The notes beneath the pieces were generated by a model, which saw only the letters and a list, made by a program, of their open reading frames with translations, had not been told where the DNA came from and ran no database searches. This document shows, one piece after another, positions 5,511 to 5,734 of a DNA stretch of 64,000 nucleotides. Numbering within the stretch: position 1 is the stretch's first letter; each line of letters begins with the position of its first letter. The translations under genes were made by a program, and so were the position numbers. Origin of the DNA: Octopus bimaculoides (taxonomy: Eukaryota); the NCBI RefSeq assembly GCF_001194135.2, contig NC_068993.1, positions 62,561,706 through 62,625,705 of the forward strand, in the 5' to 3' direction.

Positions 5511-5734
5511 CTTACTCTGTATTGAACAGTGCCATCAGCATGAAGATGCATCATACGGTTTGGTACAGTGATATTGTGGAAGTTTGCTTCCTTTTCATTG
5601 GCAAAATATAAATCCGGTACCCAGATTCTATCCATAAACTTTGTATCCAGTTCCAGATTTTCATCTGTACCCGTGGAAAATTTTAACCTGGGATCATTCC
5701 ATTTTTGTGTAATGATAAAATTCATTGAGAAGTC
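5511..5734 (-). CDS. Internal exon of a Cys-loop ligand-gated ion channel subunit (GlyR/GluCl-like clade), binding loops D, A and E
   Basis: Translates DFSMNFIITQKWNDPRLKFSTGTDENLELDTKFMDRIWVPDLYFANEKEANFHNITVPNRMMHLHADGTVQYRV(R), with the WNDPRL and IWxPDLxFANEK family motifs. Acceptor ttcttccttttag|GAC, donor AG|gtaaga. 224 nt, phase 0 to phase 2, matching the GlyR alpha exon of the same content as I recall it. Confidence 0.96.

What the first reader, a model, noticed from the sequence alone, without database searches (positions are those of the whole stretch)
5511..5734. pLGIC with a rewired complementary binding face: loop D Phe/Arg lost, Arg gained in loop E
Seen: loop D reads DFSMNFIITQKW versus human GlyR alpha1 DYRVNIFLRQQW, giving F63I and R65T. 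Loop E reads NRMMHLHADGTVQYRVR versus NKLLRISRNGNVLYSIR, giving R119H and S129R. Loop G (23394 exon) has Asn where the nematode GluCl has its Arg. Known: the loop D Arg binds the agonist carboxylate in glycine, GABA and glutamate-gated Cys-loop channels, and as I recall amine-gated invertebrate channels such as MOD-1 and HisCl lack it. Inference: this subunit is probably not a conventional glycine receptor despite a likely GlyR-like annotation. It may be gated by an amine or another ligand, may use the loop E Arg as a relocated carboxylate anchor, or may be a structural subunit.
Basis: partly seen in the sequence, partly recalled or inferred. Interest (0 to 1): 0.7.

Follow-up and report, generated by a model that had tools for sequence, protein, structure and literature searches.

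The report
Orphan mollusc glycine-receptor-like channel subunit
This is a real, conserved exon of a chloride-channel receptor subunit labelled "glycine receptor-like", but the residues that hold glycine, GABA or glutamate are replaced and the key positive charge sits on the neighbouring strand, a pattern shared by a mollusc-wide group of receptors with unknown activators.

Summary
Window 5734..5511 (minus strand) is a 224-bp exon with canonical splice sites. It aligns without gaps to GlyR alpha D57-R131 and gives F63I, R65T, R119H and S129R. Two upstream exons of the same gene lie at 23461..23394 and 41553..41489. The Cys-loop, loops B/C/F and the membrane domain are outside the window.

The ortholog exon (79% identical) keeps all four changes. 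dN is 0.15 while synonymous sites are saturated, so the gene is under purifying selection.

Among 195 homologues, none has a basic residue at both 65 and 129. 148 have R65 only and 29 have K/R129 only. Every named K/R129 sequence is a mollusc (cephalopod, gastropods, bivalves), auto-annotated "glycine receptor alpha-like".

Full-length members keep the anion-selectivity PAR motif and aromatics Y99, F159 and Y161. They replace E157 with Q/K and lose T204. R119H is common in mollusc relatives, and F63I occurs in only a subset.

So this is not a conventional Gly/GABA/Glu receptor. It belongs to an uncharacterised subfamily with a relocated cationic anchor. The ligand is unknown. I found no functional study of the group. 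Interest is moderate.

The parts
5511..5734 (-). Exon (224 bp, GlyR-numbering D57 to the first two bases of R131) that encodes loop D, loop A and loop E of a Cys-loop receptor ligand-binding domain. It carries I63, T65, H119 and R129.
   Evidence: Translation. Splice signals. Gapless 75-aa match to GlyR alpha chains, E 1.5e-21. pLGIC profile HMM E 1.5e-36. The exon limits equal those seen in vertebrate GlyR alpha genomic fragments, '..Q|DYRVNIF...LYSIR|..'.
5708..5710 (-). Codon ACA, Thr at GlyR position 65. This is the loop D position that holds the carboxylate-binding Arg in GlyR, GABA-A alpha and GluCl.
   Evidence: Role of the Arg: PMC4338433, PMC4006026, PMC13335744.
5516..5518 (-). Codon AGA, Arg at GlyR position 129. 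This is the loop E position (beta6) that holds the carboxylate-contacting Ser/Thr in GlyR, GABA-A and GluCl.
   Evidence: K/R at this column in 29 of 195 homologues, never together with R/K at 65.
5546..5548 (-). Codon CAT, His at GlyR position 119 (loop E). This state is widespread in mollusc relatives and is not specific to this subfamily.
5714..5716 (-). Codon ATC, Ile at GlyR position 63 (the loop D aromatic position). A subset of the subfamily shares it.
23394..23461 (-). Upstream exon (68 bp) that encodes beta1/loop G to the start of beta2: (D)VPTKVKVHMYVNSFDSIRESSM. Asn sits at the GluCl loop G Arg position.
   Evidence: tblastn. Splice sites ttttcag|AT...ATG|gtaagt. Profile HMM E 1e-4. 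Coordinates.
41489..41553 (-). Further upstream exon (65 bp) that encodes the N-terminal helix region: SEVIKNILLNYDNRISPHFDP. It joins in frame (G|AT = Asp) to the 68-bp exon.
   Evidence: tblastn with Argonauta P0009, E 9e-4. Profile HMM E 0.006. Sequence and splice sites cacag|G...CCAG|gtaaga. In-frame concatenation.

Best explanation
The finding is exon 4 of a functional, selectively constrained gene for a Cys-loop (pentameric ligand-gated) channel subunit of the GlyR/GluCl-like anionic branch. The source is a mollusc genome, probably a cephalopod. The subunit carries the signature of an uncharacterised, mollusc-wide group of 'glycine receptor alpha-like' proteins. In this group the single basic residue on the floor of the complementary face has moved from strand beta2 (loop D, position 65) to the neighbouring strand beta6 (loop E, position 129). 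In full-length members, the other residues that hold an amino-acid agonist are gone as well. The loop B Glu157 that pairs with the agonist amine is replaced by Gln/Lys. The loop C Thr204 that contacts the carboxylate is lost, and loop C is acidic and variable. The aromatic residues that cradle an ammonium group (Y99, F159, Y161, mostly F207) and the PAR anion-selectivity motif are kept. Shown here: exon structure, register, the substitutions, their conservation in an ortholog under purifying selection, the 65/129 mutual exclusivity, and the state of loops B/C/M2 in relatives. Inferred: the channel is anion-selective and is not gated by glycine, GABA or glutamate in the canonical pose. It most likely still binds a small ligand with a cationic nitrogen in the retained aromatic box. 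An anionic or H-bond-accepting group of that ligand would be anchored by K/R129 (helped by K157 in cephalopod and heterobranch members), so the pose differs from GlyR. The ligand itself is unknown.
For: Exon and register. Three exons of one minus-strand gene join in frame. Ortholog exon P0001/L001 is 79% identical and keeps NFIITQKW and MMHL..GTVQYRIR. dN is 0.147 with synonymous sites saturated (pS 0.93), and the splice sites are conserved. Mutual exclusivity in 195 homologues: 0 with a basic residue at both 65 and 129, 148 with R65 only, 29 with K/R129 only, 18 with neither. In the K/R129 set, 129 is always K/R while 65 varies (T14, E7, Q4, D, I, M, N). Named members are Argonauta, Ostrea, Saccostrea, Pecten, Solemya, Lottia, Patella, Gigantopelta, Batillaria, Littorina, Elysia, Plakobranchus and Lymnaea. 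In full-length members 157 is Q/K and never E, F159, S158 and Y161 are invariant or nearly so, Y99 is in 11 of 12, T204 is kept in only 2 of 12 (Y202 in 1), and 'VPAR' precedes M2. The loop D Arg and the loop E and loop C hydroxyls coordinate the same agonist carboxyl group in GluCl/GlyR/GABA-A: PMC4338433. This makes 129 a plausible alternative anchor position. Precedent for a ligand-binding Arg moving between loops with recognition retained: the same paper.
Against: Loops B, C and F, the Cys-loop and M1-M4 of this gene are not in the window, and the next 10 kb of the ortholog contig holds no further exon. The principal-face and pore statements therefore rest on relatives that are 52-60% identical in the exon. 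Neighbour-joining supports the gastropod+bivalve K/R129 group (82% bootstrap) but leaves the only full-length cephalopod relative (P0009) unresolved. The cephalopod signature could be convergent. The Fisher p (1e-22) ignores shared ancestry, and the 29 K/R129 sequences may reflect only one or two events. Members with E/D at 65 could neutralise K/R129 through a salt bridge. Loop C is hypervariable in the group, which fits a conserved ligand poorly. No structure coordinates or multimer model were available to measure whether Arg129 reaches the ligand site. No functional data exist.
Confidence: 0.45

Rival explanations
1. It is an anion channel gated by a ligand without a carboxylate (a biogenic amine, histamine, acetylcholine or choline). 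It would work like HisCl1, MOD-1, LGC-55 or ACC-1, with the polar Thr65 taking the place of the loop D Arg. K/R129 would serve a structural role or contact a hydroxyl group.
For: Lynagh & Pless 2014 state that the loop D Arg is absent from HisCl1, ACC-1, MOD-1 and LGC-55 and is replaced by polar residues (PMC4006026). The window has Thr there. The aromatic box residues are retained and loop C is acidic in relatives. Octopus pLGICs with unexpected amine and ACh specificity exist (bioRxiv 10.1101/2025.04.02.646353).
Against: An invariant Lys/Arg on the pocket floor, plus Lys157 in cephalopod and heterobranch members, is an odd fit for a purely cationic ligand. The strict either/or pattern of the basic residue at 65 or 129 is not explained. 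The closest relatives are GlyR/GluCl-like mollusc subunits, not the nematode or insect amine-gated clades. That preprint screened 41 O. vulgaris channels against 18 ligands and names no responder of this type, but its full results table is not available.
Confidence: 0.25
2. It is a partner subunit that does not offer a working complementary face, or binds no agonist at all. It would assemble with canonical mollusc GlyR/GluCl-like subunits, as the GABA-A beta minus face does, and the 65/129 states would reflect relaxed or structural constraints.
For: [quoted passage not shown] Position 65 and loop C vary widely within the group. Cephalopods have at least two paralogues of this type that could co-assemble.
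Against: K/R129, H119, Y99, S158, F159 and Y161 are invariant or nearly so in the group. The exon is under strong purifying selection. The principal face also lacks E157 and T204, so it could not supply a canonical Gly/GABA principal face either.
Confidence: 0.15
3. Gating is not by a classical transmitter. The channel could be proton- or metal-gated, or 'self-liganded' or constitutive. K/R129 would form an inter-subunit salt bridge with the acidic loop C, and the invariant His119 would act as a sensor.
For: Proton-gated GlyR-like channels exist in lophotrochozoans (Alv-a1-pHCl/Alpo7; PMC4801368 and PMC10338036). The group has an invariant His119, a basic 129 and acidic residues in loop C. An orphan annelid receptor shows a 'self-liganded' apo pocket (PMC10338036).
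Against: His119 is equally common in canonical R65/S129 mollusc relatives. The positions of the loop C acids are not conserved. I could not obtain the Alv-a1-pHCl sequence or paper to compare. No geometry is available.
Confidence: 0.1
4. It is an ordinary glycine receptor exon that looks odd because of misalignment, or it is a decaying pseudogene.
For: Automatic annotation of relatives as 'glycine receptor subunit alpha-like'.
Against: The alignment is gapless with fixed anchors. The reading frame is open and the splice sites are canonical in three exons. The ortholog has dN far below dS and the same residues. The signature is conserved across mollusc classes.
Confidence: 0.02

Closest known systems
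Vertebrate glycine receptor alpha subunits (GlyR alpha1-3) and annelid glycine-gated Alpo5/Alpo6
   Same: They are the best matches among solved structures (exon E 1.5e-21; full-length relative P0009 E 1.7e-98). The exon boundaries are the same (D57...R131). Loop A is 'PDLYFANEK', loop G has Asn46, and relatives have F159 in loop B and the PAR motif.
   Different: R65->T, S129->R, F63->I and R119->H in the window. E157->K/Q and T204 lost in full-length relatives. These are the residues that hold glycine's carboxylate and amine.
Lophotrochozoan glutamate-gated chloride channels (Aplysia-like and Schistosoma-like GluCl; Lynagh et al. 2015, PMC4338433)
   Same: They are close mollusc paralogues (P0017, P0018, P0022 and P0006 are 52-53% identical in the exon). 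Position 157 is uncharged (Q/A) as in GluCls. Both cases involve a ligand-binding Arg that has moved to a different loop.
   Different: GluCls keep the loop D Arg and loop E Ser and add a loop A Arg ('FFRNEK'). The window has Thr65, Arg129 and Ala101 ('YFANEK').
Amine/ACh-gated anion channels of ecdysozoans (HisCl1, MOD-1, LGC-55, ACC-1)
   Same: The loop D Arg is replaced by a polar residue (PMC4006026). They belong to the anionic branch.
   Different: No evidence of clade membership. The conserved basic residue at 129 is not reported as a feature of those channels, and I could not check their sequences here.
Unclassified lophotrochozoan anionic pLGIC classes noted by Lynagh et al. 2015
   Same: [quoted passage not shown] The present subunit fits that description.
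   Different: The paper, as far as its text shows, does not describe the specific 65-to-129 relocation of the basic residue or its mutual exclusivity, and it reports no function.
GABA-A receptor beta subunits (minus face)
   Same: They lack the loop D Arg and the loop E Ser/Thr (Q and G).
   Different: GABA-A beta keeps E155 and T202 on its principal face for GABA. Relatives of the window gene lack both equivalents, and beta has no basic residue at 129.

Membership tests
Cys-loop / pentameric ligand-gated ion channel superfamily (Pfam PF02931 + PF02932) | Homology to the neurotransmitter-gated channel ligand-binding domain | tested here: met
   PDB phmmer E 1.5e-21. Homologous exon products carry PF02931. 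Profile HMM E 1.5e-36.
Cys-loop / pentameric ligand-gated ion channel superfamily (Pfam PF02931 + PF02932) | Cys-loop disulfide and four transmembrane helices | not testable with these tools
   The exons for these parts are not in the window. They are present in full-length relatives.
Anion-selective branch (GlyR/GABA-A/GluCl-like) | Pro-Ala-Arg motif at the intracellular end of M2 | not testable with these tools
   M2 is outside the window. 'VPAR' is present in 10 of 12 full-length K/R129 relatives, with VTAR/VAAR/VPGR in the others.
Amino-acid-gated receptors with the 'AAA motif' (GlyR, GABA-A, GluCl; PMC4338433) | Loop D arginine (GlyR R65) | tested here: not met
   Thr (ACA) at 5710-5708 in a gapless alignment.
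Amino-acid-gated receptors with the 'AAA motif' (GlyR, GABA-A, GluCl; PMC4338433) | Loop E serine/threonine (GlyR S129) | tested here: not met
   Arg (AGA) at 5518-5516.
Amino-acid-gated receptors with the 'AAA motif' (GlyR, GABA-A, GluCl; PMC4338433) | Loop C threonine (T204) and aromatics of loops A, B and C | tested here: inconclusive
   The loop A aromatic is present in the window (Y99/F100). Loops B and C are not in the window. In relatives F159, Y161 and F207 are kept but T204 is mostly lost.
Glycine/GABA receptors | Glu at the start of loop B (GlyR E157) that pairs with the agonist amine | not testable with these tools
   Not in the window. It is K in Argonauta P0009 and Q/K in all 11 scorable full-length K/R129 relatives.
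Lophotrochozoan GluCl (PMC4338433) | Loop A arginine ('FFRNEK') | tested here: not met
   The window reads YFANEK. GluCl-like mollusc paralogues P0017, P0022 and P0024 have R.
Ecdysozoan GluCl | Loop G arginine | tested here: not met
   Asn at that column in the exon at 23461..23394.
Amine/ACh-gated anion channels (HisCl1, MOD-1, LGC-55, ACC-1) | Polar residue instead of the loop D Arg | tested here: met
   Thr65. Criterion from PMC4006026.
Amine/ACh-gated anion channels (HisCl1, MOD-1, LGC-55, ACC-1) | Phylogenetic placement with those clades, and gating by an amine or ACh | not tested
The nearest relatives found are mollusc GlyR/GluCl-like proteins.
Mollusc 'K/R129' subfamily (defined in this report) | Non-basic residue at 65 together with Lys/Arg at 129 and His at 119 | tested here: met
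   T65, R129 and H119 in the window. The same pattern occurs in 29 homologues.
Mollusc 'K/R129' subfamily (defined in this report) | Monophyly that includes the cephalopod sequences | tested here: inconclusive
   NJ bootstrap is 82% for gastropod+bivalve members. Argonauta P0009 is unresolved: 4% inside that group, 33% with GluCl-like P0017.

The most novel reading that the evidence does not exclude
Molluscs, cephalopods included, have a family of inhibitory Cys-loop receptors whose cationic ligand anchor moved from loop D to loop E more than 500 million years ago. These receptors would respond to a transmitter not yet linked to this receptor class, or to a known amino acid bound in a flipped pose. 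That would be a further independent solution to agonist recognition, alongside the three origins of glutamate recognition.
Probability: 0.3. Interest if true: 0.7.

Novelty: new variant of a known kind. Interest (0 to 1): 0.5.

Why it matters
Automatic annotation calls these proteins glycine receptors, but the sequence evidence says their pocket cannot hold glycine, GABA or glutamate in the known way. Maps of inhibitory transmission in molluscs, including octopus brains, would be wrong if they relied on those names. The strict either/or placement of the basic residue (position 65 or 129) gives a simple, testable rule for how agonist anchors move within the Cys-loop pocket, and it extends the loop G/loop A arginine relocation known for GluCls. 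It also picks out a compact, conserved orphan family for ligand screening. The family has one or two genes in cephalopods and members in oysters, scallops, limpets, sea slugs and pond snails.

Tried and rejected
(1) I searched the window for the remaining exons with tblastn (GlyR alpha1 and nine mollusc relatives) and with a pLGIC profile HMM on all six-frame fragments. Only the three minus-strand exons are significant, and nothing lies downstream in 1..5510.

(2) The ortholog contig L001 has no further exon in the 10 kb downstream.

(3) Three weak tblastn hits on the + strand at 62105, 62831 and 63023 (loop D-like and Cys-loop-like) suggested a decayed second pLGIC gene. The profile HMM gives E about 11, so I rejected them as chance.

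(4) The first word-index protein search with the exon returned only 5 exon fragments. The exhaustive representative search and a profile search were needed. Neither returned an exact match to the window or a full-length ortholog, so the source species and the full protein stay unknown.

(5) The Octopus LGC screening preprint names only DopC and AChRB receptors in its supplements, its alignment file is truncated, and motif searches in it found nothing.

(6) The Alv-a1-pHCl paper (Juneja 2014) is not held, so I could not compare with the proton-gated annelid channel.

(7) The NJ phylogeny could not place the Argonauta relative, and no ML software was available.

(8) I did not run structure prediction. 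The tool returns no coordinates and models monomers only, so it cannot test the inter-subunit geometry that matters here.

(9) One literature query timed out.

Full report
**What is at the coordinates**

Window 5511-5734 is a coding exon on the minus strand. Translating 5734..5511 gives DFSMNFIITQKWNDPRLKFSTGTDENLELDTKFMDRIWVPDLYFANEKEANFHNITVPNRMMHLHADGTVQYRV, followed by two bases (AG) of an Arg codon. The other two frames are full of stops. The exon has a polypyrimidine/AG acceptor (ttttag|GAC) and an AG|gtaaga donor.

A phmmer search of all PDB chains returns glycine receptor alpha3, alpha1 and alpha2 as best hits (E 1.5e-21 to 1e-19), then GABA-A beta subunits. The alignment to GlyR residues 57-131 has no gaps over all 75 residues. 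The register is therefore fixed by W68, D70, R72, L73, 'W.PDL.FANEK' and R131.

- F63I, codon 5716-5714.
- R65T, ACA at 5710-5708.
- R119H, CAT at 5548-5546.
- S129R, AGA at 5518-5516.

The only nearby basic residue is K67. GlyR alpha3 also has K67 beside R65, and the position varies among relatives.

**The gene around it**

The window is AT-rich eukaryotic DNA. It has many microsatellites, eight assembly gaps and no long ORFs.

I searched with tblastn using GlyR alpha1 and nine mollusc relatives, and with a pLGIC profile HMM on every six-frame fragment. Exactly three significant pieces turned up, all on the minus strand and collinear:
- 41553..41489: 65 bp, SEVIKNILLNYDNRISPHFDP, HMM E 0.006.
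- 23461..23394: 68 bp, (D)VPTKVKVHMYVNSFDSIRESSM, HMM E 1e-4.
- 5734..5511: 224 bp, HMM E 1.5e-36.

They join in frame through canonical splice sites. The two introns are about 18 kb each.

The exon limits at D57 and R131 match those seen in many vertebrate GlyR alpha genomic fragments ('...Q|DYRVNIF...LYSIR|...'). This supports positional homology.

The loop G claim is right. The 68-bp exon has Asn at the column where ecdysozoan GluCl-type sequences have Arg.

The exons for the Cys-loop, loops B, C and F, and M1-M4 are not in the window. They lie beyond its low-coordinate end. The signal-peptide exon was not identified.

Weak + strand matches at 62.1-63.1 kb that looked like a second, decayed pLGIC are not significant by the profile (E about 11). 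I dismissed them.

**Is it a live gene?**

An exon product from another assembly (P0001, contig L001) is 79% identical. It keeps NFIITQKW (I63, T65) and MMHL..GTVQYRIR (H119, R129). Its splice sites are conserved. Between the two exons dN is 0.147, while synonymous sites are saturated (pS 0.93). That is strong purifying selection over a long divergence. It is not a pseudogene and not an assembly quirk.

**Relatives and the pattern behind the substitutions**

An exhaustive HMMER scan of 1.84 billion representative proteins found 3343 homologues.

The closest full-length one is P0009, at 60% identity over the 98 aa of the two exons. It is 'glycine receptor subunit alpha-1-like' from the octopod Argonauta hians. 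A profile search then pulled in more relatives. They come from:
- Bivalves: Ostrea, Pecten, Solemya, Mya, Tegillarca, Mytilus.
- Gastropods: Lottia, Elysia, Plakobranchus, Batillaria, Lymnaea, Littorina.
- A chiton: Liolophura.

I tabulated the columns equivalent to GlyR 65 and 129 in the 195 homologues that cover both:

| State at 65 and 129 | Sequences |
|---|---|
| Basic at both | 0 |
| R65, non-basic 129 (136 of them R/S) | 148 |
| Non-basic 65 (T14, E7, Q4, D, I, M, N), K/R129 | 29 |
| Neither | 18 |

The Fisher test gives p = 1e-22, but it is not corrected for shared ancestry.

All 29 K/R129 sequences have H119. However, 32 of the 136 R65/S129 sequences also have H119, so R119H is a general mollusc state and not part of the rewiring. 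I63 occurs in 9 of the 29, and Phe is commoner.

Every named K/R129 sequence is a mollusc.

A group with T65/S129 plus the lophotrochozoan loop A Arg (Haliotis type) and a chiton sequence (N65/S129) have lost R65 without gaining K/R129. They could be intermediates.

**What full-length members say about the rest of the pocket**

I aligned full-length members to human GlyR alpha1 (P0044) and, through HMMER, to GlyR alpha3 chains.

The K/R129 proteins keep the following:
- The Cys-loop.
- The 'VPAR' motif before M2 in 10 of 12 (VTAR, VAAR and VPGR in the others), which marks the anion-selective type.
- Loop A 'Y-[FI]-x-NEK'.
- S158 and F159 in all scorable members, and Y161 in 11 of 12.
- Mostly F207.

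They differ from GlyR as follows:
- Gln or Lys, never Glu, at 157. This is the loop B residue that pairs with the agonist amine in Gly/GABA receptors.
- T204 is kept in only 2 of 12.
- Y202 is kept in only 1 of 12.
- Loop C is acidic and hypervariable. Argonauta reads CTAKYEENYFTC against GlyR CTKHYNTGKFTC.

The entropy ranking within the group shows H119, R131, N102, E103, S158 and F159 invariant. K/R129, Q/K157, Y99 and Y161 are among the better conserved positions. Positions 65, 67 and 127 and loop C 200-206 are among the most variable.

The window's loop A reads YFANEK. It therefore lacks the loop A Arg that defines lophotrochozoan GluCls. GluCl-like mollusc paralogues have that Arg.

**Phylogeny**

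I built a neighbour-joining tree of 38 long sequences (318 columns). The gastropod+bivalve K/R129 sequences group with 82% bootstrap. Argonauta P0009 is not placed reliably: 4% inside that group, and 33% with a GluCl-like Pomacea protein.

The cephalopod branch may be a divergent member of the same subfamily, since it shares non-basic 65, K/R129, non-Glu 157, F159 and loss of T204. It may instead be a convergent case. I could not settle this without ML tools.

Cephalopods appear to have two paralogues. One is the window type. The other is the P0009/P0183 type ('TFILTQIW').

**What is known**

Lynagh et al. 2015 define an amino-acid-agonist ('AAA') motif shared by GluCl, GABA-A and GlyR. It has three aromatics and a Thr from loops A-C, plus a loop D Arg and a loop E Ser. 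[quoted passage not shown]

Positions 65, 129 and 204 therefore surround the same ligand atom group. That makes a basic residue at 129 a structurally plausible substitute for one at 65. This step is inference, because no coordinates were available.

The same paper shows experimentally that a glutamate-binding Arg can sit on either side of the interface (loop G or loop A). [quoted passage not shown]

Lynagh & Pless 2014 state that the loop D Arg is absent from HisCl1, ACC-1, MOD-1 and LGC-55, where polar residues replace it, and from GABA-A beta.

Annelid Alpo5 and Alpo6 are glycine-gated, and Alpo7 is proton-gated.

A 2025 preprint screened 41 Octopus vulgaris Cys-loop channels against 18 ligands. 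It reports a dopamine-gated cation channel and an ACh-gated anion channel, both of the nicotinic-like branch. It says nothing retrievable about this group.

Four further literature searches found no functional study of these proteins.

**Interpretation**

Shown:
- A real, constrained exon of a GlyR/GluCl-like subunit.
- Loop D lacks the Arg.
- Loop E carries an Arg at the Ser position.
- This either/or placement of the basic residue holds without exception in the sample.
- The state defines a set of mollusc proteins whose principal face is also non-canonical.

Inferred:
- The subunit is anion-selective.
- It is not gated by glycine, GABA or glutamate in the known pose.

My best guess (0.45) is that it still binds a small ligand, because the aromatic box and K/R129 are conserved. 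The negative or H-bond-accepting group of that ligand would be anchored at beta6 rather than beta2, which implies a shifted or flipped pose. K157 would help in cephalopod and heterobranch members.

Rivals:
- An amine/ACh-type ligand without a carboxylate (0.25).
- A partner subunit without a working complementary face (0.15).
- Proton, metal or self-liganded gating through a 129-loop C salt bridge (0.10).
- Misalignment or pseudogene (0.02, already contradicted).

**Caveat on recoding**

If the source is a coleoid cephalopod, A-to-I editing could change some codons. ACA (T65) cannot become an Arg codon by A-to-G changes. CAT (H119) could become CGT. Neither was tested. This follows from the codons and from general knowledge of coleoid editing.

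**Verdict**

This is a member of an uncharacterised, mollusc-wide variant of a well-known receptor family. Its existence as 'new subunit classes lacking the AAA motif' was noted in 2015. The specific relocation of the basic anchor and its function have not been described in anything I could find.

It is moderately interesting and directly testable in oocytes.

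Noticed in passing
window ~35200-36600, minus strand: A decayed non-LTR retrotransposon reverse transcriptase, with frameshifts and stops. Its motifs include WVDYRKAYDMIPHS and IVFMDDLKLF. It lies inside the ~18-kb intron between the 65-bp and 68-bp exons.
   Followed up: partly
window 5300-5410: A compound microsatellite, (GA)n then (GACA)n then (GATA)n, about 100 bp into the intron downstream of the 224-bp exon.
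   Followed up: no
window 13250-14175, 19773-20012, 23034-23052, 39609-39645, 45232-45393, 46315-46575, 49278-49434, 56230-56706: Eight runs of N (assembly gaps). Most are flanked by TA/TATG-type simple repeats, and these produce all the long 'ORFs' in the mechanical ORF list.
   Followed up: no
window 62105-62137, 62831-62857, 63023-63070, plus strand: Three short tblastn matches that resemble loop D and Cys-loop motifs (IFYRQQTNDKR, DMENFPMDV, YLDLKRYYIAQQVCSL) suggested a decayed second pLGIC gene. A pLGIC profile HMM gives E about 11, so they are treated as chance.
   Followed up: yes
related proteins P0009/P0156 (Argonauta hians), P0183, P0001 (L001 393-617): Cephalopod-type sequences fall into two paralogue types with the same T65/R129 signature. 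The window type reads NFIITQKW (P0001, 79% identical). The second type reads TFILTQIW (about 60% identical).
   Followed up: partly
related proteins P0024, P0158, P0159, P0070, P0077 (Haliotis type) and P0168 (Liolophura, chiton): These mollusc subunits have lost the loop D Arg (T or N) but keep Ser129. The Haliotis type also carries the GluCl-style loop A Arg. They are possible intermediates between canonical and K/R129 pockets, or they may correspond to the 'non-glutamate-binding ancestors' of Aplysia-like GluCls that Lynagh 2015 mentions.
   Followed up: no
window 5546-5548 and 5708-5710: If the source is a coleoid cephalopod, A-to-I RNA editing could recode H119 (CAT to CGT, Arg). It cannot create Arg at position 65 (ACA). 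No editing data were checked.
   Followed up: no
related proteins (e.g. P0006, P0007, P0008, P0010, P0011, P0012, P0014): Several database 'proteins' are gene-model artefacts with the loop D-loop E exon duplicated in tandem. This inflated their scores in the representative search. P0006 ranked first through two matched stretches.
   Followed up: no
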